Notes under the pieces: generated by a model
What the model saw: only the letters and a program-made list of their open reading frames with translations
Databases searched by the model: none
What the model was told of the DNA's origin: nothing
From: Fonticula alba ATCC 38817
Lineage: Eukaryota; Protista; Nucleariida
NCBI GenBank assembly: GCA_000388065.2
Contig: KB932217.1
Length of the DNA stretch: 51,216 nucleotides
Direction: 5' to 3' (one strand)
Made by a program: the position numbers and the translations under genes
In this document: piece by piece, positions 2 through 49,473 of the stretch
Layout: the number at the start of each line of letters is the position of its first letter
Position numbering within the stretch: position 1 is the stretch's first letter

Positions 2-1455
2 CCGCAGCCGCCGGATGTCCTCATCCGCCAGGGCGTACTTCCGGAATGACGAACGCGAATCCCAAAGGTCCTCAGGCCATCCGAAGGAGGACGTCGCATC
101 CAACAAAGCTTGCAAGGGCATGCCGAGGTATTCACCTATCTCTTGCCCTGCTAGCATGGGCCGCAGTCCAGCCAGACCCTGGATCTCGGCTTCCAGGTTC
201 TGACTCAGCCCCGGCGCCAGCAGCTGCACATGCGTCCCCGGGCCGGACCCATGCGCCCGGGGGTCGAAGTATACCAGCCGATTGACCGCCGATGGCCCGG
301 CCGGCGCAGGGCTCGCCTCGCCCCCCGGCGACCCTTCACCCGGGGGGACCTGGTGCACTGGCGAAGTGGCCGGCAAGAAGCGCCGCGTGTACTCGCCCAG
401 CGTCAGCCGGCCCAAACCCTCCGGCCGGGTAGGTTGCCGCACCGGCCGCCCGTTGGAACGGGGTAGCACCACCCCCGGCTCGTAGTACCTGATGTACCAG
501 CGGAGCCGAGCGGCCGGCATCGCCAACTGCTTGGCCATGTCCCGGAGACTGTGCCGGCGTTCTTGCAACAGCNNNNNNNNNNNNNNNNNNNNNNNNNNNN
601 NNNNNNNNNNNNNNNNNNNNNNNNNNNNNNNNNNNNNNNNNNNNNNNNNNNNNNNNNNNNNNNNNNNNNNNNNNNNNNNNNNNNNNNNNNNNNNNNNNNN
701 NNNNNNNNNNNNNNNNNNNNNNNNNNNNNNNNNNNNNNNNNNNNNNNNNNNNNNNNNNNNNNNNNNNNNNNNNNNNNNNNNNNNNNNNNNNNNNNNNNNN
801 NNNNNNNNNNNNNNNNNNNNNNNNNNNNNNNNNNNNNNNNNNNNNNNNNNNNNNNNNNNNNNNNNNNNNNNNNNNNNNNNNNNNNNNNNNNNNNNNNNNN
901 NNNNNNNNNNNNNNNNNNNNNNNNNNNNNNNNNNNNNNNNNNNNNNNNNNNNNNNNNNNNNNNNNNNNNNNNNNNNNNNNNNNNNNNNNNNNNNNNNNNN
1001 NNNNNNNNNNNNNNNNNNNNNNNNNNNNNNNNNNNNNNNNNNNNNNNNNNNNNNNNNNNNNNNNNNNNNNNNNNNNNNNNNNNNNNNNNNNNNNNNNNNN
1101 NNNNNNNNNNNNNNNNNNNNNNNNNNNNNNNNNNNNNNNNNNNNNNNNNNNNNNNNNNNNNNNNNNNNNNNNNNNNNNNNNNNNNNNNNNNNNNNNNNNN
1201 NNNNNNNNNNNNNNNNNNNNNNNNNNNNNNNNNNNNNNNNNNNNNNNNNNNNNNNNNNNNNNNNNNNNNNNNNNNNNNNNNNNNNNNNNNNNNNNNNNNN
1301 NNNNNNNNNNNNNNNNNNNNNNNNNNNNNNNNNNNNNNGGCGGCCGGGGACCATACACCGGCCAGAGACCAGCCCCGCCGGGCCGCCACCGCCGTCGCCA
1401 ATGCCGGCGAGCCCCACGCACGCAGGGCTCGCATGGCCGTCCTTGAAGCCAACAT
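2..1455 (-). CDS. Partial hypothetical protein spanning an assembly gap; presequence-like N-terminus and HTH-like segment; runs off the left edge
   Basis: 571..2 is stop-free on the minus strand (LLQERRHSLRDMAKQLAMPAARLRWYIRYYEPG...ALADEDIRRLR) and is absent from the ORF track because it has no stop in the window. Before the gap, ATG at 1455 follows a pyrimidine tract and CAG and gives MLASRTAMRALRAWGSPALATAVAARRGW (Arg-rich, no acidic residues). Joining the two parts across the gap is an assumption. Confidence 0.5.
573..1338. other. Assembly gap (N run)
   Basis: Run of N in the sequence. Confidence 1.
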
Positions 1456-8304: not shown

Positions 8305-8377
8305 TGGAGGCGGAGGGTATCGATCCCCCTGCCTGCCGCATGCTAAGCGGCCGCTCTACCATTTGAGCTACGCCCCC
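8305..8377 (-). tRNA. tRNA-Ala (AGC)
   Basis: GGGGGCGTAGCTCAAATGGTAGAGCGGCCGCTTAGCATGCGGCAGGCAGGGGGATCGATACCCTCCGCCTCCA; G3:U70 Ala identity pair, anticodon loop TTAGCAT, downstream T6 terminator. Confidence 0.97.
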
Positions 8378-10224
8378 TTGGTGGTGGCCTCCTCCCGGGA
8401 GCCCGCCTTCTTGTGGGTGTGCGCCATGCGCCGCGGGCCCTGGGCATGGCCGGCTGCTCGCCTGCGCGGGTCCGCATCCCCCATCCCCTCCCGCACACGG
8501 GGCTCCCCTCCTGGCTCGCGCCCGTCCGCCCCCCCTCGCCCGCCGCCGCTTCGCCCCCGGCCCCCGAGACAGCTGCACTGCCGCCTTTGGTGGCACGCGC
8601 GGCCCCGCGGCGGGTCCGCCACCGGTGCTGTCCCATGCGGCCGGACAGTCAGCCTGAGGCCGGGAGCCCGCGGCGCGACGCCCGGCCTGTGACAGCGCGG
8701 CGCCTCCTCCGCCGCCCGCTCCCCGGCGCGCGGGAGACACAGCCGGCCGGCAGGGGGCTGGCTCCTGCGCGCGTGCGACCAAAATAAAGAAAAGGCACGC
8801 GCCCCGCCCACGGCCCCATCTCCCGGGGAGACGCCTCCGATCCGGGAAACGAACCCGGGCCTCGCGCGTGGCAGGCGGGGCTCCTCGCCGCCAAAAACAA
8901 ATCGCGCCCGGTGCTGTGAGGGCCCATGCCTCGGGCCGCCGCGCGTCTCCTCGCGTGTCCCCACCTTGACCCCCGCCCATCCTCCGCCGCCGCCCCTTGC
9001 GGTGGCCGCTCCGCCATGTGACATCACCACGCCGGGCATGGCCACCTGTTGAGGAGACCCCGCCGCCGCCGCGCCTCGCTCCAGCCAAGCGGCATGCATG
9101 CCTCGAGGTGTCTTTGCCCCTTCCCTCCCCCCCCCGGCCCTGCTTCTCTCGGGGGCCCCAGCATCCTGGGGTGCGCCTCCCCGTGGGCGGCGCCGGCTGC
9201 CGGGCTTTCCCCCCTCCGGACTTGGCGCCTGTCTGCACGGAGGCCTGCCCCAGGGCCGAGACCCCTCCGGCCGTCTGCCGGGACACGGTCCCCAGGGGCC
9301 CCTGTCGCATCCGGAGGCCTGCCCACGCAGTGCGCTCCTCGCACATGGCACAGGCCCGGCCCCGGTGTTCCGCCTCGGGCCCCCCGGCGGGTCGGGCTCC
9401 CACCCCGCGCCCGGACAGGGCCGCACGCGCCTTGGCCGCCGGGTTGCCTGCACACGGACCCGGGCCTGGCCGTACGCGGGCCGGCTCAGCATGCTCGCCC
9501 GGCACCATCTTCCGGGCGCCGCCGAGGCCCCGTCCCCTCGACAGGCGGCCCCTTGCCCGGCCAGCCGTCCGCAGGCCGCCGCCCCGAGGCACCCGATCCC
9601 AAGCACGCGCGCCGGATGCATTGCCCAATGTCCCGCCCATGCAGGGGCCCCTCCTCGAGGGGGCCCCCGCGCCGGTCGCCCTCCCTGGCCGATGTGCCTG
9701 GTGACGCCGCCACCGGCCCGGCCCGCACGACCATCCCCAATCTCCCTGCCTCCCCCCCGCGCGCGCGCGCGCGCGCGCGTCCCCGCCTCCTGGGGCCCTC
9801 CCTCCGTAGCCTTGGCGCCTCGTCTCCCCGCAGGGCGCGCCTGCCTTCGTGTACATCCCCCTGGGGGACCAGCCTCGCGGAATGCGCCTCGCGTCGGTCC
9901 CACCCTCTCCCCAAAAGCCGAGCCGGAGTGCTGCCCCCTTCTCTGTGGGCGCCCGCTGCGGCTGCCGGGGGGGGGAGCCTCGCCACCCGGACGCCGGGCC
10001 CCGCACCGACAGCCAGGGCCGTCACGCCCTCGGCCCGCCCGGCCTCTCATTCGAAACGACCCCCCCCCCCCGCCCGGACGCCCGTCTGGTCCTCCAGGCG
10101 GCTCGGATGTCCGATCCCCCCCCCCCCCCGCCACCCCCCCACGAGGCCCGGGCCCATGTCTCGCCGAGCGGGTGCGCGCCTGCCAGGCGCCAACAATGCA
10201 CAGCGCGCGAGCAAAAAGTAGGTC

Positions 10225-10298
10225 TGACCATGATGCGGCTCGAACACACAACCTCCTGATCCGTAGTCAGGTGCTCTATCCAATTGAGCTACACGGCC
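10225..10298 (-). tRNA. tRNA-Arg (ACG)
   Basis: GGCCGTGTAGCTCAATTGGATAGAGCACCTGACTACGGATCAGGAGGTTGTGTGTTCGAGCCGCATCATGGTCA; anticodon arm CCTGA-CTACGGA-TCAGG, downstream T5. Confidence 0.96.
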
Positions 10299-11101
10299 AT
10301 GGAGGTGCACGGCCCACACGCCCATAAGTCCCTTCACAGGCACGAGCCGCCCGCGGTCGCCGGACGCCGCCGCCATCGCCCCGGACCCGGCACGCGACGG
10401 CCCGAAGCAACAGCCCTCGGCCCTGTCCCCCACGCACGAGCCGCCCCTCGGCATCGCACACCTGCGGCGCCCACCTTACACCGTCAAGTGTGCGCCCGGC
10501 CCCCCCTGGGCCCGGTGTGCACGCTTGCGCCCGATCCGCGCTCAGCCCAGGGGCCGCGCCACGGCACGCCATGCCCAGCAGACGCTGGCCACCGCACATG
10601 CGGTCACAGCATGGGATCGCATTCGGCCAGCTGCCCCCCCACCAACGCGCCCCGTCCCTCGGCCGCCACCACCCGGCGCCAGCCGCACCCACCCTTCGCG
10701 GAGCCGGCGGCCTTCCGACACACCGAGGACACCCCCCCCACCCCCCCTGGCGCTCGGCCCGGGTCCCCGGACCCCGGAGCGTGGTCTCCTGTCGGCGCAT
10801 GTGCCATCCCCATGGGCCCGGCAGTGGCTCCATTTTGGGCCCTTCCCGCGAATGGCGCAACCCCCTGATCGCCAGCTCCCCCGGGGCGCCTGCCCGTTGG
10901 CCGCCGGACGCACGGCGGCCGCATGCCCGCAAGCAACCTGCCTGACGCAGCGCCGGGCTGCCCAGCGCAACTTCGTTATTCACGGCTGCCGAGCGCCCCA
11001 CCGGCCCTTCCCGCCCCACCCCGACGCCACCCTGCCTGTGGTCGTCACATCCCTGTGGCATGCTCGAATCCGTGCGACCTATAGCCTCTTCCCTGGTTTT
11101 T

Positions 11102-11165: not shown

Positions 11166-11764
11166 GCCACAGAAGGCCCTTCGCCAAAGTCCCGCCCCGT
11201 GTATCCCCCCCCCCTCCCTCCGACCATCGGCGTGCTCTGGCATGCTTGCAACAAGGCAACCCCCCCTCCCGCGCCCCATCCAAAGTTCCCCCGCTGGCCA
11301 AAGGTCGCCCGCTCAGAGTGCCGTACCCTGGCCCGTCCTCCCCGAGCCTTTGGCCCATGCCGCACCTGGCTGCACTCGCCCCGTCCGACGGCCCCGCCAT
11401 CCGGGGGACCCCCTCCCCGCTCTCGAGGCGGCACCGCCCTAGCCAGACGCCCACAGGGCGATGGCGCCGTCTGAGGCACGCCGCCCGGGGTCTGGGCCTG
11501 CCCCCCCCCCCTCCCGCCCCTGCACACGGTCCATGACGCCCATCGAGCGCCGCGGGAGGCAACGGCCCGCCCGCGCCCCTCGTCCTCTTCCCTTCGAGGG
11601 CGGCCAAAAAGCCCCGCGCCTCGGGCAAAATGCCTGCCAGGCATGGCGTCGCTTTGGCCCCGGTGTTCTCTCCCCATCCCGGCCCCCCCCCCCCTCCCAT
11701 GCCGGGATGGGGTCGGATGTGGATCGCTCCCGGACGCACCCCCTCCGCGCAACAGGCAAAAATG

Positions 11765-11846
11765 CATCACCGGCAGGATTTGAACCTACGCGGGCAGAGC
11801 CCATCCGATTTCTAATCGGACTCCTTAACCACTCGGACACGGTGAT
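11765..11846 (-). tRNA. tRNA-Ser (AGA)
   Basis: ATCACCGTGTCCGAGTGGTTAAGGAGTCCGATTAGAAATCGGATGGGCTCTGCCCGCGTAGGTTCAAATCCTGCCGGTGATG; long variable arm, G discriminator, downstream T run. Confidence 0.97.
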
Positions 11847-12200: not shown

Positions 12201-15200
12201 CTATGTCCGGGATGCCAGCAAAGACACAGCCGCCTCGGCCTCCGGGCCCGACCGCGCGGCCAGCAGCTCCCGCAGACGCGCATTCAGGCCGCGGGCATTT
12301 TTGGCCGCTGCATTTGACCCGGCCCGTGGTTAGCCAAAGGCCGGAAGACCGGCGGCCCATGCTGCCCATGCCCCCCGCACCCCCGCACCCCCGCACCATT
12401 GTTCGCGATCGCCACCAGGGCCTTGGTCAGCTCGAGATCCGCGCACGGATCCCCGGCAAAGGGCTCCTGGAGGCTGGCCAGCGCCTCGACCAGGTGGCCA
12501 TTGGCCGCTCGGGCGTTGCCGGGGGCTGGGTCAATGCACCGGCCAGAAGGGAGGACGCATGTCAGCTGGAAGCGCCGACCGGGGAAGGGCACGGCGAGCG
12601 ATCACATCACCCACGCGCGGAGGCCCCGCCAGGAGGGGGGAGAAGGAGCGGGAAAAAAAAAGGACAGCCCAGTGCTCGCACCATGACGCGCCAAGAGGAC
12701 CGCCCCGTGCAGGGCGTATTCTAGCGCCTCCCGGTCCCCGGCGCAGCCCGGCGCCAGGGCCGCGATGCGCCCCGCCACTTGGGTGTTGAGCCGACGCCGG
12801 TTGGCCGGGGCTGCTCCGCCGAGAGGTGTTAAATCCGAGAGGCAGGCGGGGGGAAAAAAGAGAAGAGACCAGGCAAGCCCCCGACGCCCCGCACGCCGTA
12901 CCGTTGTTCGCCAGGAGCATCATGCCCAGAAGCCGGCGGTTGTGGAAGTGCGCCGCGTCGTACGCATCCTGCAGACTCAGGGCCTGGAAAAGGGCCGCAT
13001 TCATGCGCGGGCAGTTGCGCGTCGCTGCGCCGAGGACACCGCCCAAGGCGTGCACGTCGGAATGTGAGCCGGCCAGCGGGCGATAGAGGGGGAGAGAGAA
13101 AAAGGGGGAGGGGGAGAGAGAAAAAGGGGGAGATGGAGAGAGAAAATAGAGAAAATAGAGAAAATAGAGAAAATAGAGAAAATAGAGAAAATAGAGAAAA
13201 TAGAGAGAGAGAAAAAGAAGCCTGCTTCGCGGCCCCCCATGGGCCAAAGAGCGCGCACCGCTGCCGCAAAGGTTGGCCAGCGCCGCGATGGCGTACTCCT
13301 GCGTGTCGAAGTCATCCGGCGCCCGCGCGATGGCCAGGCGAAGCTGGCGCAGGATCAGGACATTGAACGACTGCCGGTTGTGCAGGGCTGCTCCCATTCC
13401 GCGAGTCGTCGAAGGTTAGTTTCCCGGGACCGCGCCGCGGAGGCACATAGCCAGGCGGCGGGGCCGCGGCCCGAGGCGGAGGGAGACAAACACCAACAGG
13501 CAGGAGGCGAAGAAAAGACGCGGGGGGGGGGAAAAAAAAAAAGCACACATGGCGGCCCCGCGACAGGCAGCAAGCATCGCACAATTGATGGCCAGGTGGC
13601 CCAGGGCGATGGACAAAAACCGCTGCACCTTCACGTCGTCCACCGGCCGATGCGTGTAGTCCAGCAGCGCCCGCATGGTCAGGCGGTTCATGCGCGAGCC
13701 ATTGTTGTGCGCTGCTCCGACCGCCGGCATCCATCGTCAGCAAAGGCCACCCGCCACCGATGCAGGCCAGGGCACCCGCCGGCCCTCCCCGCCCCGCAAG
13801 GCACGAACGCACAGTTCCAAGCCAGCTGCCCCAGGCCGGCCAGGGCAAAGATCTCCATCTCCTCATGGCCGCGCCCGCGCCGCACCGCGGCCAGGATCTC
13901 CCGCATCAGCAGCCAATTCACCACGGGCCGGTTGTCGCGCGCTGCATCGCGAGGGTGCGCCCATCAGTCACACGAAAATGCCGGAGAGCGGCCAAGGGCC
14001 GAGCGCGCGCAGGGGGGGGGGGCAGGGGTGGACGCCCAGCAAGGGCCAAGGCAGCAGCCTGGCCCACCCCCGGCATCGTGCATCGACGTACAGTTCCGGG
14101 CAATGCCAACCACACACCGCAGGGCCTGGGTCTCGGCCGACAGGATCCCGACCATCCGCCGGGACAGGGCCAAGGACGCCTGCAGCAGCTGGCCATTGAG
14201 CTGGCTACTGTTCGTGACGGCTGTCACCAGGGGGGGGGGGGGGAACAATCGGCACATCGACGCAGCGGCGCACCGGCGCACCGGCGCACCGGCGCATCAG
14301 CATGTCGGCCCATCGGTATGTCGGATTATCAGGACATCAGTACAGCGGTACATAAGCACGAGCCACCGGCAGGGGACACATGCGTGGCAGGATGACCGCA
14401 CCACCGACCGACAGGTGCCCGAAGCACCGCGCCACCGAATCCTGCAGGTCCATGTCATCCCGCGCCACGGCCGCCACGCGCAGGACCGCACAAAACAAAG
14501 CATGGTTCACCTCCGGCAGGTAGAGACTCGCTAACGTGCGTGACCCAGCACAAGGGCACCGGTGAGGACGCCTTCGCAGGCCGGCCGCATGGCAAAAGAG
14601 GGGGCACTTTGACACACGCACAGGGGGCAAGCAGCCGCTCCAGGCCGCGGCCCACATGCCGCGCCACGTCGACCGCGCCCAGCCCCTGCTCGAGGCCCAG
14701 CTCCAGGACCGCGGACAGCATTTCCAGCAGACGCCGCGCGAAAGGCCCCGTGCTTTGGCGCGGCGCTGGTCATTGCACCGGGTTAGAGACCTCGCCCGCC
14801 GGGGGGCCGACCGGCGGCGGCAGCCGCAAAGGCCCCAGCAAAAACCGGCATTCGCACACACACACACACACCATGAACGGCCACGAGTGACAGCCCGAGG
14901 GCCAGCCATGAGCAGCCCTCCGCACCGAGGTCCGGTCGCCGGAGAAGCCTTTCCGCACACGCGACCATGTCCTCCCAGTGGCCGGAGGAAAAACTTTCTG
15001 CAACGCCCCCGCGACGGCGCACGCAACAGGGTCGAGCCACCGTCAGGAGCGAGGGGCAACGAATGCAACACAGGACTAGCGGCCTCGGCGTACCATTGAG
15101 CGCCAGGTGGGCCAGGCCCATGGCCACGGCGGTGTGCGTTGGGCCGGTGCGCCCCGGCCGCTCGGCCAGCGACCGCAGATGCCGCAGGATCGCCTCATTC

Positions 15201-15785
15201 CCCCCAGGGGGGTTGCACTCAGCTGCGGCCCTCCCACGTGTTAGCACCCTCGCACCCTATGGCCAAGCACATGGGGCGCGGAGAAGGCCCGGCACAAGCC
15301 CCCACCCCCGGCGGCCATCGCGCACCATTGAGCGCCAGCCCGGCCAGCGCCCACGCCGAGAAGCCCACCACCTGCGGGTCTGACGACGTGGCAAACGCCC
15401 GGGCGCGGAGGAACACCGCCCGGTTGACCATGCGCCCGGCTGTCTGCGCTGCTGCGAGTGTCAGCGACGGGGTCGACGCCGCGCGGCCCCGGCCGGCGCG
15501 CCGCGGAAGCACAAGGGCGCCAAGCAAAAGAGAACCCGCAGCCAAATGGCCCACACCCACCCACACACCCACACACACACGGGCCCCGCGTCACGCACAG
15601 CGTTGGGCCACCGCCGCAAGGGCCCGGCACGCGTGTACCGCGGCCGCCGGATCGTCGGCCAGTTCCTTGAGGCGCTCCAGCAGACCGACGCTGGGCGCCT
15701 CGGTGCCGGCCTCCACCGCGTCGGCGAGCCGCATGGCCGCCTCGACCCCGGTGGGGGCCGGGTCCGCGCACTCCAACGAGCCCAT
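12201..15785 (-). CDS. Armadillo-like repeat protein, 14 exons, one repeat per exon
   Basis: Exons: 15785(start uncertain)-15599, 15451-15326, 15222-15094, 14997-14872, 14765-14622, 14530-14402, 14220-14092, 13941-13813, 13711-13583, 13387-13259, 13024-12902, 12810-12682, 12525-12397, 12307-12201 (TAG). All introns are GT..AG and phase 1, most with CTAAC/CTGAC-type branch sites. The spliced frame is open, with 41-48 aa helical repeats such as SLHNRQSFNVLILRQLRLAIARAPDDFDTQEYAIAALANLCGS. Confidence 0.85.
13139..13201. repeat. 9-bp microsatellite (AGAGAAAAT)x7 in an intron of the ARM-like gene
   Basis: Seven perfect copies; pyrimidine-rich on the sense (minus) strand. Confidence 0.95.
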
Positions 15786-16182
15786 CCGACTCGTGTGAAG
15801 CCCAGCCGGCAGAGGCCCGAGTGGGAGGAGGCCCGCTGCTCGAGGGGTCGACGGGGGCGTCGAGGGCCTGGGGGAGGGAGCTCCCGGCGGGAGTGCAGAG
15901 AAAGAGAGAGAGAGAGGGGAGGGAGAGAGAGGGAGAGAGGGAGGGAGCAGATAGGCGCGCGGGGGGAGGCGGCCAAAGAGGGATTCCACGGTGTCGATGC
16001 CGGTCCGGCCGGGGGCGCCCCTGCCGCCGCGTAGATTGCCGGCCGAAAAGGGGCCGCAGGGGGCGGGGGGAAAAAAACAACAACAAACAGCCTGCCGGTG
16101 CCGGGCAACGCGCGCCCCCGGGCCTGCCAACGGTGCGACGGGGTGGTTCAAAAGCCCGAGAGCCCGGTTGGCCGTCAGCTCG

Positions 16183-16254
16183 AGCGACTTGGCGCAGGGG
16201 AAGCGTGTTGGGCTCATAACCCAAAGGTCGGTGGATCGAAACCACCAGTCGCTA
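16183..16254 (+). tRNA. Initiator tRNA-Met (CAT)
   Basis: AGCGACTTGGCGCAGGGGAAGCGTGTTGGGCTCATAACCCAAAGGTCGGTGGATCGAAACCACCAGTCGCTA; A1:U72, three G:C pairs in the anticodon stem, ATCG in place of TTCG in the T loop, downstream T run. Confidence 0.97.
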
Positions 16255-19239
16255 CTCTTTTTTCGGCCCGGCCGTTTCGCCGCCGGAAAGAGGGCCGTCT
16301 GTCGGCCCGCCACGCGCGAGAACCCGGCCAGGCCCATCGGTTTCTTTTCATGGCGGCACACCTGGCCGAGAGCCGCCCGCCAGCAGCGTGCAAGGGGGGC
16401 GGGGGGGCGGCAGCCCCGGGCCGGCGCGCCGCGCGCCCTCACACGCGCGGGCGTCGCCACCTGGCAGAATAGCCGGCCCTTTTTTTTTCGGGGGGGGGGG
16501 GGCACATCCCCCATGTGCCGGGGCGCGCGGCCCGCCTTCGCCCCCCCCCCCCCCGGCTCCAGGGATGGCGGTCCCGCCGCCAGGACATGCTCCAAGTCCA
16601 CAGGCCGGGCGCGACGCCCCCTGCGGCACGGGGCCGGCCCGCCCCCGACGCGGCATCGGCCCCCGAGCACATTTCGCTCCGGGGTCGGCGGGGCCCGAGC
16701 AGCTCGCCGCACGGGCCGCCCACGGCCGACAGGCCGGCACTAGAGCAGCCATGCATCCTCCGGTGTGCGGCCTGCTGCCGGCTCGGCCCTGGGGGCGGCC
16801 TGGCCCGCCGCCGCTCCTGAGCCACCCCGACACGGCCGAGCGGGCCCCCGCACGGCCCCTTTGCCCGCCCTTTCCTGGCCACTGCCCCGACTCGGCCGCC
16901 CCAGCGTCCCCTCCTCGGTCGGCACGCCGCCAGCCACACCGACATCTACATGCGCACAAGCAGCCACGATGGTCCCCTTACCCAGCGACAGACACGCGCG
17001 CGCTGGTCACACCGGTGCGCGCACACTGTACCCGGTGTCCCGCCCCAGAGCGGCATGTGGCCGCCTCAGCAGCTCGGCCAGACCTCTCTCCCCTGGCCCC
17101 CTCCTCCCCCGGGGGGATGTGCCATACACCCGCCCATGCGGCCACCGGCTCTGGGCGTGGCCCCACACTCGGGTACCCCGGCCGCAGGCTCGCACGCCAC
17201 GCGCCGAGCCATCGGCACAGGCATCACCATCATCCGGCCGTGCGTGCCAAGGGGAGGACAGACCCCCCCCCCCCCCCCGCCACAGCAGCCGCAACCATCC
17301 ATTCGCGCCGCGCCAAATGTCCCCCGCCCTGGGGGCGGCCCTCCACCCGGGTGACGCGGCGCTCCCGCTGGCTCCGTGCCCGGAAAGGGACGCACCCCCC
17401 GAGAAAGCTCCTGTCCCCTCGGTCGGCGACAGGACATGTCCTCCCCCGCGCGCGGATTCCCCCTGCATGGCTGCGAACCGCCAGCCGACACAGTCCCATC
17501 ACCGGGCCCGGGAGAATCCGAGCAGCGCCGCATGACACCAGCCACCCCCCCCCCCCCACACACACACACACATACGCCCGGGAAGGGGGCACTGCACGGA
17601 TTTCGGCGGCCCCAGGCCGGGCAAAGCCGCACCAGTCGCCACACCAAGGGTGCGCCGAGAGCTGCCCAGGCACCAGAAGGCCTTTCGCATGGAAGCCGCC
17701 CCCCCCCTTCCCATGACGCCGGTGCCCTGGCACCGAGCACTGCCATGGACGCCCATAACGCGCGGCACCGGCCACCGGAAGGCGACCCGTGCGCGCGGCC
17801 GCATGCGCACCCTGCGCCAGAGAGGGAGAACGTGTCCGGAGGCCGGCTTGTCTGTGCTGCGCGGCGTGGCCCATCGCCCTGGGGCGCCTCTCCGTCCGAA
17901 GGCGGTCCCGCCGCCGGGGACGCTCTCCCGCAAAGCACCCCAGCCGGAAGCCCGGCATGCCGCGTGATCTGCCGTCGGTTCTGGGCCGACGAGAATATAC
18001 ATACCCCACAACGGACGAGACGCCCTGCCCGGCCATGGGCACACACACATACCCCTCAGTCTGGCATCCCGGTCGATGGGCCAACGCCTCGGAGCGTGAC
18101 CACGCGTTAGCGCCGACGCTGCCAACGCTCCGTCCTCGCCGCGCGCGTGCCCCGGGCCAGGGGCGGCGGCCCTGGGGGGGCGGCCCGCCTCCCAGCTCGC
18201 TCGCGCTTCTGCCCTCGCGGCCCGACGCCGCGTTTCAAGTTCACCGCACCCCCGCGCCCTATTTTCCAAGCGGCCCATCATCCAGAGACGGCGATCCATT
18301 TACCGCCTCCTCCAGCCACGTGCCCCCCTGGAAGCGTGCCCCGCCATGTTGGCGGCCTGCAGCCGTTCGCACGCAACCCCCCCCCCCGGGCGTTGGTGTC
18401 TGGAGCAAGCGTCCCGCCCCTGACCCGGGGGGGAGGGGCTAATGAGCCGGCGAAATGTCCGCCGCCCCTCTTTCGCCCGGCCCTTCGTTCGGGCCCGGCA
18501 CCCCTGCCCTTCTGCGCCGCCGGGGAAATGCAGGCACACAGAAGGTGCGTAGGCTATTCGCCAGACGCATCCCGGGGCCCGACCCGGCGAATGAGGCACA
18601 AGAAGCGCGCGCCCGCCGGCAACGAAGGACCCGCCCGCGCCGCACCCCCGCCCGCTCTCGCCCCCTCGTCCCTGCTCCCGGCCGGCCGGCCGGCCGGCCG
18701 GCCGGCTCATCAGCGGCCCCCTGTCCCAATCCTTGTTTGTTGCAATCGACCTTCCCACGGTGCCAGCGGATCGTGCGCCAGCCCCCTCGCTGCCGCCCTA
18801 CGGCGAACCCTCCTCGCCGCTGGCCAGCCCGCGGCCGTGACAACAGCCTGGCAGCGGGGGGGGGGGGGGGGCTGCCGCACCCCGGACCCCGGGCCGGGCC
18901 GCCGGCCGCGGCGACCGGCACCCCCTCCCCCGTCCGGTGCCTCGAATGTCGCCCTCCCCCGGCCCTGCGAGCGCGCCCGCCTGGCCTTTGCCCCCCGCGG
19001 CCGGCCGTACGGGCCGGAGGATCACCCGGCCGCCGGGGGACCGGCGCGCCTCGCAGCCCGACACCGCCCGGTGTCCCGGGCGACCGCCTATAAGCGGACC
19101 CTGCGCCGGGGCTGGCCGGTCGCTCGGGTGTCTGCCACAGCCCCCGCCCCGCCCCACGCCCCGCCCCCCCCCCCCTTTCTGTCCCACCGGCCCCGCCGCC
19201 TCTCCTTTGCCTCGCCTCGTCGCCCGAAAAGACGCCATC

Positions 19240-25859: not shown

Positions 25860-25930
25860 TGCGTCGACCGGGAATCGAACCCGGGTCTACCGCGTGGCAG
25901 GCGGCAATTCTACCACTAAACCATCGACGC
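25860..25930 (-). tRNA. tRNA-Gly (GCC)
   Basis: GCGTCGATGGTTTAGTGGTAGAATTGCCGCCTGCCACGCGGTAGACCCGGGTTCGATTCCCGGTCGACGCA; downstream T6. Confidence 0.97.
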
Positions 25931-26720: not shown

Positions 26721-27560
26721 NNNNNNNNNNNNNNNNNNNNNNNNNNNNNNNNNNNNNNNNNNNNNNNNNNNNNNNNNNNNNNNNNNNNNNNNNNNNNNNN
26801 NNNNNNNNNNNNNNNNNNNNNNNNNNNNNNNNNNNNNNNNNNNNNNNNNNNNNNNNNNNNNNNNNNNNNNNNNNNNNNNNNNNNNNNNNNNNNNNNNNNN
26901 NNNNNNNNNNNNNNNNNNNNNNNNNNNNNNNNNNNNNNNNNNNNNNNNNNNNNNNNNNNNNNNNNNNNNNNNNNNNNNNNNNNNNNNNNNNNNNNNNNNN
27001 NNNNNNNNNNNNNNNNNNNNNNNNNNNNNNNNNNNNNNNNNNNNNNNNNNNNNNNNNNNNNNNNNNNNNNNNNNNNNNNNNNNNNNNNNNNNNNNNNNNN
27101 NNNNNNNNNNNNNNNNNNNNNNNNNNNNNNNNNNNNNNNNNNNNNNNNNNNNNNNNNNNNNNNNNNNNNNNNNNNNNNNNNNNNNNNNNNNNNNNNNNNN
27201 NNNNNNNNNNNNNNNNNNNNNNNNNNNNNNNNNNNNNNNNNNNNNNNNNNNNNNNNNNNNNNNNNNNNNNNNNNNNNNNNNNNNNNNNNNNNNNNNNNNN
27301 NNNNNNNNNNNNNNNNNNNNNNNNNNNNNNNNNNNNNNNNNNNNNNNNNNNNNNNNNNNNNNNNNNNNNNNNNNNNNNNNNNNNNNNNNNNNNNNNNNNN
27401 NNNNNNNNNNNNNNNNNNNNNNNNNNNNNNNNNNNNNNNNNNNNNNNNNNNNNNNNNNNNNNNNNNNNNNNNNNNNNNNNNNNNNNNNNNNNNNNNNNNN
27501 NNNNNNNNNNNNNNNNNNNNNNNNNNNNNNNNNNNNNNNNNNNNNNNNNNNNNNNNNNNN
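26721..27560. other. Assembly gap (N run) flanked by poly-C
   Basis: Run of N in the sequence. Confidence 1.
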
Positions 27561-44656: not shown

Positions 44657-44731
44657 NNNNNNNNNNNNNNNNNNNNNNNNNNNNNNNNNNNNNNNNNNNN
44701 NNNNNNNNNNNNNNNNNNNNNNNNNNNNNNN
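44657..44731. other. Assembly gap (N run)
   Basis: Run of N in the sequence. Confidence 1.
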
Positions 44732-45505: not shown

Positions 45506-45577
45506 AGGTCGAGCCGAGAATCGAACTCGGATTGACAGATTCAGAGTCTGCCGTGATAACCATTACACCACTCAACC
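45506..45577 (-). tRNA. tRNA-Gln (CTG)
   Basis: GGTTGAGTGGTGTAATGGTTATCACGGCAGACTCTGAATCTGTCAATCCGAGTTCGATTCTCGGCTCGACCT; T discriminator, downstream T runs. Confidence 0.96.
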
Positions 45578-47151: not shown

Positions 47152-49139
47152 CTCTTTCTTTTTCTCTCTTTCTTTCTCTCTCTTTCTTTCTCTGCTTCTC
47201 TCTTTCTTTCTTTCTCTCTTTCTTTCTTTCTCTCTTTCTTTCTCTCTTTCTTTCTTTCCTTTTTTTTCTTTCTTTCTTTCTTTCCTTTTTTTTCTCCTCC
47301 TCCTTCTCCCTCTCTTTCCCTCTCTTTCCCTCTCTTTCCCTCCCCCTCTCTCCCTCTCCCTCCCTCTCCCTCCCTCTCCCTCCCNNNNNNNNNNNNNNNN
47401 NNNNNNNNNNNNNNNNNNNNNNNNNNNNNNNNNNNNNNNNNNNNNNNNNNNNNNNNNNNNNNNNNNNNNNNNNNNNNNNNNNNNNNNNNNNNNNNNNNNN
47501 NNNNNNNNNNNNNNNNNNNNNNNNNNNNNNNNNNNNNNNNNNNNNNNNNNNNNNNNNNNNNNNNNNNNNNNNNNNNNNNNNNNNNNNNNNNNNNNNNNNN
47601 NNNNNNNNNNNNNNNNNNNNNNNNNNNNNNNNNNNNNNNNNNNNNNNNNNNNNNNNNNNNNNNNNNNNNNNNNNNNNNNNNNNNNNNNNNNNNNNNNNNN
47701 NNNNNNNNNNNNNNNNNNNNNNNNNNNNNNNNNNNNNNNNNNNNNNCCCCCTCCCACAGGGTGAAATCCGCTGTACCGCCTTCAACGAGACGGCCGAGTA
47801 CCTGAACCAAGTGATCGCCGTGGGCAAGGTCTTTTCCGTGTCGCGCTGCCGTGTGGTCGATGCCAAGAAGCAGTTCTCCGGCCTGGCACACAACTTCGAG
47901 ATCAGCATCGACAATTCGTCGGACGTGGTGGAGCAGGACTCCGCCGACTCCAGCATCCCCCAGGACAGCATGACCTTCGTCAAGTATTCCCAGCTGCCGG
48001 AGACGGAGAAGAACACCAATGTCGATGTCATCGGTGTCATCCGCCGGGTGGAGGCCCCGGTGGAGATTGTCTCCCGCGCCAAGAACCGCACCTTCATCAA
48101 GCGCGACGTGGAGCTGGTCAATGACGAGCTCATTTCCGTCATCCTGACCGTGTGGGGCGAAACGGTGGAGCAATTTTCCGAGAGCAGCATCGGGTCCATT
48201 GTGGCCGTCAAGAGTGCCCGTGTCGGGGACTTCGGCGGCCGGTCCCTGTCCGTGGGGTTCGCCTCGTCGGTGCTCTTTAATCCCAACTCCCCGGCCGCCG
48301 AGCGCCTGATGACCTGGTGGAAGACCGTCGGCGAGGGGGCCTCCTTCGTGTCGATCTCCTCCGATGGCGGCGGGTCCGGCGGGGGCGCCGGCTCGCGCGT
48401 GCCCAGCAACCTCGCCACCCGGCCGCTGTGTGCCCTGCGGGACGAGCAGATCGGCGAGAGCGGCCCCGAGGTGGTGGCCGTCAAGGCCACCGTCACCGTC
48501 GTCAAGACCGACGGCACCCTCCTGTATGCCGCCTGCCCGAACACCACCACCTGCCGCGGCAACAAGGTGATCTCCGAGGCGCCGGGGCAATTCCGCTGCC
48601 CCAACTGCAATGTCGTTCACGCGACCCCGGCCCATCGGTACGTCCTGTGGGTCTCGGCCTTGGCCGTGTCGCTGTCTGGTCCTTTGTCTCTTTCTGCCTC
48701 TTTTTGTCCCTCCTTGTCTCTTTTTGTCCCTCCTTGTCTCTTTTTGTCCCTCCTTGTCCCTTTTTGTCCCTCCTTGTCCCTCTTTGTCCCCCCTCCCCCT
48801 CCTCCCTCTCACACACATATGCGCCACAGTTTTATTCTCCCCCTCAGCATGGCCGACATGACCGGGTCCATTTGGGCCACGTCCTTCGACAACACTGCCA
48901 CCCTGCTGACCGGCACCACGGCCGATCATGTGGAGGAGCTGCGCACCGCCGGCGACATGTCCTTCGTCACCTACTTCAAGAACTTCACCTTCCGCGAGTT
49001 CAACTTCGTCCTGCGCGCGCGGCTGGACTCCCTCAATGAGGAGATGCGCGTCCGGTGCCACATCAACGCCGTGGAGCCGGTGAACTTCCGCAACGAATCC
49101 CTCAAGACCCTGGAGCTGATCAACCAGTATTCCCTGTGA
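46048..49139 (+). CDS. RPA1: Replication protein A 70-kDa subunit (623 aa)
   Basis: Exons 46048-46210, 46335-46428, 46574-47000, 47760-48637, 48830-49139; total 1872 nt. DBD-A (PIASISRFLNKWTICGRVTVKS...FSFNLLDSSGEIRCTAFN), DBD-B (VDVIGVI...VAVKSARVGDFGGRSLS), DBD-C with C4 zinc finger (YAACPNTTTC...FRCPNC), ending ELINQYSL. Confidence 0.95.
47107..47384. repeat. CT-rich microsatellite in RPA1 intron 3, running into gap 47385-47746
   Basis: TTTC/TCTC units. Confidence 0.9.
48683..48790. repeat. TTTGTCCCTC-type 10/20-bp repeat in RPA1 intron 4
   Basis: TTTTTGTCCCTCCTTGTCTC units inside intron 48638-48829. Confidence 0.85.
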
Positions 49140-49473
49140 GGGCATCCTCCCTGCCCCCGCGCCCTTCCCGCCGGGCCGCCGGCCGTCTCCCTCCCCTCCC
49201 TGTGAGCCGGATCGTGCCTCGGCCTCGCTCAAAATAAACCCCCCGTGCTGATGTGCTGCCCGCGCGCCGTGTCGGTGTGCATGCCGGCGTGCCACCTCCC
49301 CTGCCTCCCATGGTGACGGCGATCCTCTCGGGATGCGATCGCGCAAGTGNNNNNNNNNNCCCCCTCCTCCCCTGCTCTTGCCGCCGCCGCCGCCGCCCCC
49401 CGTCCCCGCTCCTCCTTCTCCTGCCTCCCCTGCCGCTTGGCATTCCCCACAAGAGCCAACACCAAAAGAGATC

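What the first reader, a model, noticed from the sequence alone, without database searches (positions are those of the whole stretch)
12201..15785. ARM-like solenoid built from interchangeable one-repeat, phase-1 exon cassettes
Seen: all 13 introns are phase 1 and fall at the same repeat position, after an L-A-x-N type motif (LALN|, LAWN|, LAIN|, IARN|, LANN|, IANN|). Internal exon lengths are 126,129,126,144,129,129,129,129,129,123,129,129 nt, all multiples of 3. The repeat consensus is roughly xxxNxxxxNxxLxxxLxxxxxxxxDxxxxxxALxxLxxLAxN. Established: symmetric same-phase exons can be duplicated, shuffled or skipped without frameshift, and one-repeat-per-exon layouts are known from variable recognition proteins such as brown-algal LRR-ROCO genes. 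Inference: the gene grew by serial exon duplication and could yield in-frame skipped isoforms (up to 2^12 in principle) as a variable binding surface. Caveat: the repeats are strongly diverged, so the duplications are old and current shuffling is not shown.
Basis: partly seen in the sequence, partly recalled or inferred. Interest (0 to 1): 0.8.

Follow-up and report, generated by a model that had tools for sequence, protein, structure and literature searches.

The report
One-repeat-per-exon ARM-like gene, Fonticula
This is an expressed gene of the slime-mould-like protist Fonticula alba. Each of its armadillo-type helical repeats sits in its own same-phase exon, a neat record of growth by old exon duplication, and nothing found here shows the exons being shuffled or skipped today.

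Summary
On the minus strand, 15785-12201, lies a 14-exon gene, Fonticula alba H696_06000. All 13 introns are phase 1 and all 12 internal exons are multiples of 3. A 2012 cDNA contig confirms 12 junctions exactly. The only correction is that intron 1 uses an acceptor 3 nt downstream, so exon 2 is 123 nt, not 126.

An AlphaFold model (pLDDT 82.8) is an all-helical solenoid. It superposes on importin-alpha, SPAG6 and designed armadillo proteins at Z 25-27. Twelve of 13 introns fall within 3 residues of the end of a repeat's last helix. "ARM-like" is therefore supported by predicted fold, although Pfam Arm is not reached.

The variable-cassette reading is not supported:
- The only relative among 1.8 billion proteins is a second Fonticula gene, H696_02541, at 49% identity. 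It is collinear exon for exon, with 12 phase-1 introns at the same positions.
- Matching exons are 30-68% identical, against about 26% for non-matching ones.
- No spare repeat exons lie in introns or on the opposite strand.
- All four non-canonical annotated transcripts retain an intron. None skips an exon.

Raw-read splicing could not be tested. This is best read as a lineage-restricted ARM-type scaffold built by old serial exon duplication and then copied once as a whole gene.

The parts
15599..15785 (-). Exon 1 (187 nt). ATG at 15785. N-terminal cap plus first repeat-like unit. Begins MGSLEC.
   Evidence: Model. The cDNA contig piece 15599-15989 includes a 5' UTR of at least 204 nt. Identical to P0019.
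15326..15448 (-). Exon 2 (123 nt in the cDNA).
   Evidence: Joint 15448|15599. Both candidates are listed. The annotated proteins lack the extra Ala.
15094..15222 (-). Exon 3 (129 nt), one repeat, ends LALN.
   Evidence: Repeat score beats 200 of 200 shuffles.
14872..14997 (-). Exon 4 (126 nt), a diverged repeat.
   Evidence: Upstream joint. The downstream joint is hidden by the repeat filter but the contig coordinates fit. A repeat by structure only.
14622..14765 (-). Exon 5 (144 nt), a diverged repeat with a longer first helix.
   Evidence: The paralogue's exon 5 is 159 nt.
14402..14530 (-). Exon 6 (129 nt), one repeat.
14092..14220 (-). Exon 7 (129 nt), one repeat, ends IARN.
13813..13941 (-). 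Exon 8 (129 nt), one repeat, ends LAWN.
13583..13711 (-). Exon 9 (129 nt), one repeat, ends LAIN. The least conserved exon between the paralogues (30%).
13259..13387 (-). Exon 10 (129 nt), one repeat. The only unit with a weak Pfam Arm match. 65% identical to the paralogue.
   Evidence: Pfam Arm E 0.015, 15.7 bits against a cut-off of 20.6. Identity.
12902..13024 (-). Exon 11 (123 nt), one repeat, ends LANN. The most conserved exon (68%).
12682..12810 (-). Exon 12 (129 nt), one repeat.
12397..12525 (-). Exon 13 (129 nt), one repeat, ends IANN.
12201..12307 (-). Exon 14 (107 nt with the stop codon), a C-terminal capping hairpin. Absent from the paralogue.

Best explanation
The gene is Fonticula alba H696_06000. 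It encodes a 613-aa soluble armadillo/HEAT-type alpha-solenoid with no other domain. Each exon encodes one structural repeat: a loop with conserved Asn residues followed by two long helices. Every intron sits in phase 1, right after the last helix of a repeat.

The most likely history is that a unit of one symmetric 1-1 exon plus its intron was duplicated in tandem again and again, long ago, to build a 13-14 unit array. The finished gene was then copied once, giving H696_02541 on another scaffold. Since that copy, repeat number and order have stayed fixed, apart from exon 14.

Shown: the gene structure, its expression as a fully spliced mRNA, the collinear paralogue, and (as a prediction only) the ARM-like fold.

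Inferred: the protein works as an ordinary ARM scaffold or adaptor, holding a partner protein or extended peptide along the groove formed by the last helices. The best-conserved repeats, 10 and 11, are the likeliest contact site. The transcript variation on record is incomplete intron removal, not cassette choice.
For: Gene model and phases.

cDNA contig with 12 of 13 junctions.

Identity with annotated variant 3 (P0019) and the intron-retention nature of the other four transcripts.

Fold:
- AlphaFold pLDDT 82.8, pTM 0.65, all helical.
- VIA-align Z 25-26.7 over 380-400 residues to importin-alpha ARM domains and to the central-pair ARM protein 7n6g_0A (my reading: PF16/SPAG6). Z 21.5 at rmsd 3.8 to designed armadillo proteins.
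- In the Atlas shape search, all ten listed rows of nearest clusters carry Pfam Arm in 97-100% of members, TM 0.55-0.69.
- The language-model neighbours are ARM families.
- The repeat profile hits a true Arm protein, P0006, at E 1.6e-7.

Exon equals structural repeat: introns lie 0-3 residues from the helix end in 12 of 13 cases.

Paralogue: 12 phase-1 introns at the same positions. Matching exons are 30-68% identical (mean 48%) against about 26% for the rest.

Age: dS about 0.98, with 4-fold sites 56% different against 66% expected at saturation. Matching introns cannot be aligned.

No other relatives.
Against: - No Pfam family reaches its threshold on the whole protein. The ARM assignment therefore rests on a model predicted from a two-sequence alignment.
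- Four repeat units are not recognisable by sequence.
- Duplication of exon-plus-intron units is inferred from the pattern alone. The introns keep no mutual similarity beyond low-complexity runs, so parallel intron gain at a repeated sequence motif is not formally excluded.
- The function is entirely inferred. No partner, localisation or phenotype is known.
- Rare exon-skipped mRNAs cannot be excluded. Contigs drop rare variants, and the three raw RNA-seq runs laid gave no reads on this stretch.
Confidence: 0.75

Rival explanations
1. Because all internal exons are symmetric 1-1, the cell makes many in-frame exon-skipped isoforms, or the locus keeps shuffling exons. Either would give a variable recognition surface, as proposed for the brown-algal LRR-ROCO and NB-ARC-TPR genes.
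For: The arithmetic holds: all 12 internal exons are multiples of 3 and share one phase. Other first-reader notes report LRR genes with one repeat per phase-1 exon in the same genome (unchecked). Raw-read splicing was not testable.
Against: - There are two family members only, and they are collinear with identical intron positions.
- No spare or antisense repeat exons exist.
- Repeats are about 26% identical, so there has been no recent duplication or homogenisation.
- The cDNA contig holds all exons.
- The annotated variants are intron retentions only.
- Donors are a strong, uniform GTGCG and introns are short. This does not favour skipping (PMC6142364).
- dN/dS is about 0.46, so there is no sign of diversifying selection, though dS is near saturation.
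- No signalling domain is attached.
Confidence: 0.04
2. The repeats first multiplied in an intron-less gene. Introns were later inserted independently at the same place in each repeat, because each repeat offered the same preferred insertion or splice-compatible motif. On this view the exon pattern does not record the duplications.
For: The exon sides of the junctions are alike (mostly ..AAY G|gt ... cag|C), so a repeated target motif exists. The introns show no mutual similarity.
Against: It needs 13 independent gains, all at the same nucleotide of the repeat, including in diverged units whose junction sequence differs (for example CCCCCT|gt and AACGCT|gt). Loss of intron similarity is expected anyway, given exons only 26% identical. 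Duplication of an exon-intron unit explains position, phase and length in one step.
Confidence: 0.12
3. The repeats are not ARM. They belong to another alpha-solenoid class (TPR-like or HEAT-like) related to the 42-residue repeats of bacterial STAND NTPases.
For: After the two Fonticula proteins, the best hits of the repeat profile are bacterial AAA_16/nSTAND5 proteins with 42-aa repeats that Pfam calls TPR_14 (E 2e-19 to 1e-10). DSSP on the model shows two long helices per repeat, with the short first ARM helix present only in some repeats.
Against: Three-dimensional superposition favours canonical ARM proteins over their full ARM domains (Z 25-27), and all nearest Atlas clusters carry Arm. 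The bacterial matches cover only about 20-30 of the 42 profile positions, and their scores add up over many near-identical copies. No STAND NTPase domain is present here.
Confidence: 0.08

Closest known systems
Canonical armadillo-repeat proteins (importin-alpha, beta-catenin/HMP-2, SPAG6/PF16, ARMC3, ARMC8, Vac8, designed dArmRPs)
   Same: Repeat period of about 42 aa. A ...A-L-x-N-L/[SA]...N-P-x-x-N... type signature at the repeat border. An all-helical right-handed solenoid. The model superposes on the importin-alpha ARM domain at Z about 25 and on ARMC3 and Vac8 models at TM 0.67-0.69.
   Different: No Pfam Arm or HEAT hit above threshold. The first ARM helix is vestigial in most repeats. 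There is no IBB, U-box, F-box or other partner domain. No orthologue was found outside Fonticula.
Ectocarpus LRR-ROCO and NB-ARC-TPR genes with one repeat per exon (Zambounis et al. 2012, PMC3341825)
   Same: Each repeat is encoded by its own frame-preserving exon of nearly constant length. The TPR exons there are 126 nt, the same size class as here.
   Different: The Ectocarpus families are large and turn over fast. Recent duplicates differ in exon number (13 against 17). The repeat domains of paralogues cannot be aligned. Spare non-coding or antisense exons lie in the loci. Positive selection is reported, and a GTPase or NB-ARC module is attached. None of these holds here.
Repeat-protein genes grown by duplication of symmetric exons (Patthy's exon-shuffling rules; Street, Rose and Barrick 2006, J Mol Biol 360:258, listed in the reference list of PMC5100051; content recalled from memory)
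   Same: Intron positions and phase recur once per repeat, as expected if an exon-intron unit was the unit of duplication.
   Different: The correspondence here is complete (13 of 13 introns, one phase) and is seen in an ARM-type solenoid of a holomycotan protist. I found no report of this for Fonticula.

Membership tests
Armadillo (ARM) repeat superfamily | Tandem repeats of about 42 residues | tested here: met
   12 internal units of 41-48 aa. Consensus xxNxxxxNxxLxxxLxAxxxxxxxDxxxxxxxxxxLxxLAxN.
Armadillo (ARM) repeat superfamily | Sequence match to Pfam Arm (PF00514) or a clan member above the gathering score | tested here: not met
   The best is 15.7 bits on exon 10 against a cut-off of 20.6. 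No Arm or HEAT family appears on the whole proteins even at E up to 10.
Armadillo (ARM) repeat superfamily | Right-handed superhelix of helical repeats superposable on solved ARM domains | tested here: met
   Predicted model only (pLDDT 82.8). Z 25-26.7 to importin-alpha and to the central-pair ARM protein 7n6g_0A. Nearest Atlas clusters all carry Arm.
Armadillo (ARM) repeat superfamily | Three helices (H1 short, H2, H3) per repeat | tested here: inconclusive
   DSSP gives two long helices in most repeats. A short extra helix or turn is seen only in some. The geometry is intermediate between ARM and HEAT.
Shuffled exon-cassette receptor genes (Ectocarpus ROCO / NB-ARC-TPR type) | One repeat per frame-preserving exon | tested here: met
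Shuffled exon-cassette receptor genes (Ectocarpus ROCO / NB-ARC-TPR type) | Large, fast-turning gene family whose paralogues differ in exon number and order | tested here: not met
   Two annotated members. They are collinear, with 12 shared intron positions and a dominant diagonal in the exon identity matrix. Unannotated copies in the genome could not be searched.
Shuffled exon-cassette receptor genes (Ectocarpus ROCO / NB-ARC-TPR type) | Spare, non-coding or antisense repeat exons within the locus | tested here: not met
   A six-frame scan with the repeat profile finds only the annotated exons in the window and in L001. All other hits have E above 1.
Shuffled exon-cassette receptor genes (Ectocarpus ROCO / NB-ARC-TPR type) | Diversifying selection on the repeat exons | tested here: inconclusive
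   Pairwise dN 0.45 and dS 0.98, ratio about 0.46, but dS is near saturation and only two sequences exist.
Shuffled exon-cassette receptor genes (Ectocarpus ROCO / NB-ARC-TPR type) | Attached signalling module (ROC-COR GTPase, NB-ARC, kinase) | tested here: not met
   The whole 613 aa is solenoid and no other domain is found.
Alternatively spliced cassette-exon gene | Transcripts that skip internal exons | tested here: inconclusive
   None in the cDNA contig or among the five annotated transcripts, which differ only by intron retention. Raw reads gave no coverage, so rare isoforms are untested.

The most novel reading that the evidence does not exclude
Fonticula alba may have a genome-wide habit of building solenoid proteins of unrelated classes by tandem duplication of phase-1 exon-intron units. 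This gene would be the ARM-type case, and several LRR genes noted by other first readers would be further cases. A minority of in-frame skipped isoforms of such genes could then be used, for example during aggregation or feeding on bacteria. That would make this protist an independent parallel to the brown-algal exon-cassette receptors.
Probability: 0.08. Interest if true: 0.65.

Novelty: new member of a known kind. Interest (0 to 1): 0.3.

Why it matters
It is a clean, transcript-verified example of how a solenoid protein can be assembled one exon at a time. Thirteen introns in one phase each sit at the end of a predicted structural repeat, and the pattern is kept unchanged in an old paralogue. 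It also shows that symmetric exons alone do not make a variable-cassette system, because here the array has stayed fixed since before the gene duplication.

Two practical points follow. The protein that represents this gene's cluster in public databases (variant 1, 630 aa) is an intron-retaining transcript with an out-of-frame tail, and variant 3 (613 aa) is the product supported by the cDNA. The family is an orphan that sequence profiles miss but the predicted structure places among ARM proteins.

If the same exon-per-repeat pattern holds for the LRR genes noted elsewhere in this genome, Fonticula would be a useful organism for studying repeat growth by exon duplication.

Tried and rejected
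- Pfam on single exons and on the whole proteins gave nothing above threshold.
- A PDB sequence-profile search gave nothing.
- Three 2026 RNA-seq runs filed under the species label ("organism B") laid no reads on the stretch, so they are no test of splicing. That used the only read-laying run.
- The spliced protein could not be handed to the tools as typed letters. The database copies P0019 and P0002 were used instead.
- A search for paralogues inside the window by tblastn and by repeat profile found none.
- Similarity among introns, and between matching introns of the two paralogues, was absent. The exception is one pair within the gene (introns 9 and 11, z 6.6), which I put down to poly-G/poly-A runs.
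- The low-GC "islands" in the composition profile are assembly gaps made of N, not biology.
- Bacterial STAND proteins that match the repeat profile were considered as relatives and rejected as generic solenoid resemblance.
- A Vac8-like N-terminal lipid anchor was considered. MGSLEC fits the PROSITE N-myristoylation pattern as I recall it, but the paralogue begins MGPPNS, which does not fit. It remains only a lead.
- Literature searches found no report of exon-per-repeat genes in Fonticula.
Full report
**What is there.** The window is 72.9% G+C outside its N gaps. The region 12201-15785 carries a minus-strand gene. With the first and last exons fixed, this gives 14 exons, 13 GT-AG introns of 89-234 nt and a CDS of 1845 nt. 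All introns are phase 1 and all 12 internal exons are multiples of three. Donors are strikingly uniform: G/T|GTGCG in most, with G at +5 in 25 of 25 introns of this gene and its paralogue. Acceptors are CAG in 21 of 25.

**Transcript evidence.** Four small 2012 runs hold 39% of the sampled words of the stretch, about what the exons alone would give. A 2188-nt contig from them lies on the stretch with 12 joints at exactly the predicted exon borders, all CT..AC on the plus strand, which is GT..AG on the minus strand. The joint of intron 4 falls in a region that the tool skips as repetitive, but the contig's own coordinates fit a 126-nt exon 4. The cDNA uses 15448 and not 15451 (tandem CAGCAG), so exon 2 is 123 nt. 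The 5' UTR reaches at least 15989. Three 2026 RNA-seq runs under the species label gave no reads at all, which is no test, and that spent the single read-laying run.

**Identity.** A profile of the 14 repeat units (A1) was searched against 1.84 billion representative proteins. It found two strong hits, P0001 and P0002. Both are hypothetical proteins of Fonticula alba. The window's gene is H696_06000. Its public annotation has five transcripts:
- Variant 3 (P0019, 613 aa) is identical to the cDNA-supported model.
- Variant 1 (P0001) and the "partial" product (P0021) read through intron 11.
- Variant 2 (P0018) reads through intron 13.
- Variant 4 (P0020) reads through intron 9.

All the variation on record is therefore intron retention, and no transcript skips an exon.

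**The paralogue.** P0002 is H696_02541, on a 3.6-Mb scaffold, and is 49% identical. An exact spliced mapping of the protein on its locus L001 gives 13 exons of 190, 123, 129, 126, 159, 129, 129, 129, 129, 129, 123, 129 and 131 nt. Its 12 introns are all phase 1 and lie at the same positions as introns 1-12 of the window's gene. It lacks only exon 14. In an exon-by-exon identity matrix the diagonal is 30-68% (mean 48%). Off-diagonal values, and repeats within one gene, average about 26% with a maximum of 34%. The array was therefore complete before the gene was duplicated, and nothing has been gained, lost or reordered since, apart from exon 14. That duplication is itself old. Four-fold sites differ at 56% against 66% expected at saturation, NG86 dS is about 0.98 and dN 0.45, and matching introns cannot be aligned. 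A word-indexed search of 5.8 billion proteins with P0002 found only these two.

**Are the units really repeats?** In leave-one-out profile scoring against 200 shuffles, the units of exons 3, 6, 7, 8, 9, 10, 11 and 13 beat every shuffle. Exons 1 and 12 are marginal. Exons 2, 4, 5 and 14 are not distinguishable by sequence. The profile, built only from this gene, recognises 10 of the paralogue's repeats at E below 0.05 in a six-frame scan. It finds nothing else in the 51-kb window or the 15.6-kb paralogous locus: no spare, intronic or antisense repeat exons.

**Fold.** AlphaFold2 on the two-sequence alignment gives pLDDT 82.8 and pTM 0.65, with an all-helical chain. Each exon holds two long helices, plus a short extra one in some. 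In 12 of 13 cases the intron lies 0-3 residues from the C-terminal end of the second helix, so exon borders are structural repeat borders.

Structure comparisons agree on an ARM-type fold:
- Foldseek finds ARM and HEAT solenoids generally.
- VIA-align gives Z 25-26.7 over 380-400 residues with importin-alpha ARM domains and with the central-pair protein 7n6g_0A, which I take to be PF16/SPAG6. It gives Z 21.5 at rmsd 3.8 with designed armadillo proteins.
- In the ESM Atlas shape search, all ten listed rows of nearest clusters carry Pfam Arm in 97-100% of members (ARMC3, ARMC8, SPAG6, Vac8), at TM 0.55-0.69.
- The language-model neighbours are also ARM families.

By sequence the link is weak. 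Pfam Arm reaches 15.7 bits on exon 10 against a cut-off of 20.6, and nothing relevant appears on the whole proteins. The repeat profile does hit a short true Arm protein, P0006, at E 1.6e-7. The border motif (A-L-x-N, then N-P/x...N...[IL]) resembles the Arm consensus as I recall it. The profile's other hits are bacterial STAND NTPases with 42-aa TPR-like repeats. I read these as generic solenoid resemblance. "ARM-like" is therefore supported at the level of predicted fold, and membership by sequence is not met.

**Interpretation.** The functional reading, interchangeable cassettes giving up to 2^12 isoforms or ongoing shuffling, is not supported.

The Ectocarpus families that serve as the model are defined by large, fast-turning gene families, paralogues whose repeat domains cannot be aligned and differ in exon number, spare or antisense exons in the loci, positive selection, and an attached GTPase or NB-ARC module (PMC3341825). 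Apart from exon-equals-repeat, none of these is met here, and selection is inconclusive.

Short introns with uniform strong splice sites fit splicing by intron definition, in my reading. The survey by Grau-Bove et al., whose data set includes the F. alba transcriptome, finds exon skipping frequent and frame-preserving essentially only in animals, and links skipping to weak splice sites (PMC6142364). I did not extract Fonticula-specific rates from that paper.

**Likely function (inferred).** The protein is probably a cytosolic ARM scaffold that binds a partner along its groove. Repeats 10 and 11 are the best conserved between the paralogues (65-68%) and are the best guess for the contact site. 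The N-terminus MGSLEC fits the N-myristoylation pattern as I recall it, and Vac8 is among the best structural matches. The paralogue's MGPPNS does not fit, so this is only a lead.

**Alternative origin.** Independent intron gain at the same motif of each repeat cannot be formally excluded, because the introns share no sequence. It needs 13 coincident gains, including at junctions whose exon sequence differs.

**Novelty.** This is a new, lineage-restricted member of a known kind. I found no paper on exon-per-repeat genes in Fonticula. Other first-reader notes in this scan report LRR genes with the same one-repeat-per-phase-1-exon layout in the same genome. I did not check them. If they hold, the pattern is a habit of this genome rather than a peculiarity of this gene.

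Noticed in passing
window 573-1338, 26721-27560, 44657-44731, 47385-47746, 49350-49359: Runs of N (assembly gaps). They cause the apparent low-GC islands in the composition profile. Outside them the window is 72.9% G+C.
   Followed up: yes
window 11764-11846 (-) and 16183-16255 (+); also 8305-8377, 10224-10299, 25860-25930, 45506-45577: There are six tRNA genes in 51 kb. tRNA-Ser(AGA) lies about 355 nt beyond the stop codon and tRNA-Met(CAT) about 195 nt upstream of the cDNA's 5' end, so the gene is tightly bracketed by RNA polymerase III genes.
   Followed up: no
window 13139-13206 (intron 10), 14248-14316 (intron 6), 15897-15947 (5' UTR): Microsatellites inside the gene: a perfect 9-nt unit AGAGAAAAT x7.6 in intron 10, an 8-nt unit x8.6 in intron 6, and an AG-rich tract in the 5' UTR. 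Intron 10 is the longest and least G+C-rich intron (53%).
   Followed up: partly
window 12811-12901 (intron 11), 12308-12396 (intron 13), 13388-13582 (intron 9): The public annotation holds four intron-retaining transcripts of this gene. One of them (variant 1, 630 aa, out-of-frame tail) is the cluster representative in protein databases. Variant 3 (613 aa) is the cDNA-supported product.
   Followed up: yes
window 15446-15451: Tandem CAGCAG acceptor of intron 1. The cDNA and the annotation use the downstream AG. Use of the upstream one would add a single Ala.
   Followed up: partly
proteins P0003-P0005, P0007, P0008, P0010 (not in the window): Apparently bacterial AAA_16/nSTAND5 NTPases (one with a SIR2-like domain) carry long arrays of near-identical 42-aa helical repeats. 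These match the Fonticula repeat profile at E values from 2.4e-19 down to 2.6e-4. This is probably convergent solenoid resemblance.
   Followed up: partly
same genome, other pieces (notes s1-065649, s1-065818, s1-066007, s1-066418): First-reader notes describe LRR genes with one repeat per symmetric phase-1 exon in the same genome. This suggests a genome-wide mode of repeat growth. Not checked here.
   Followed up: no
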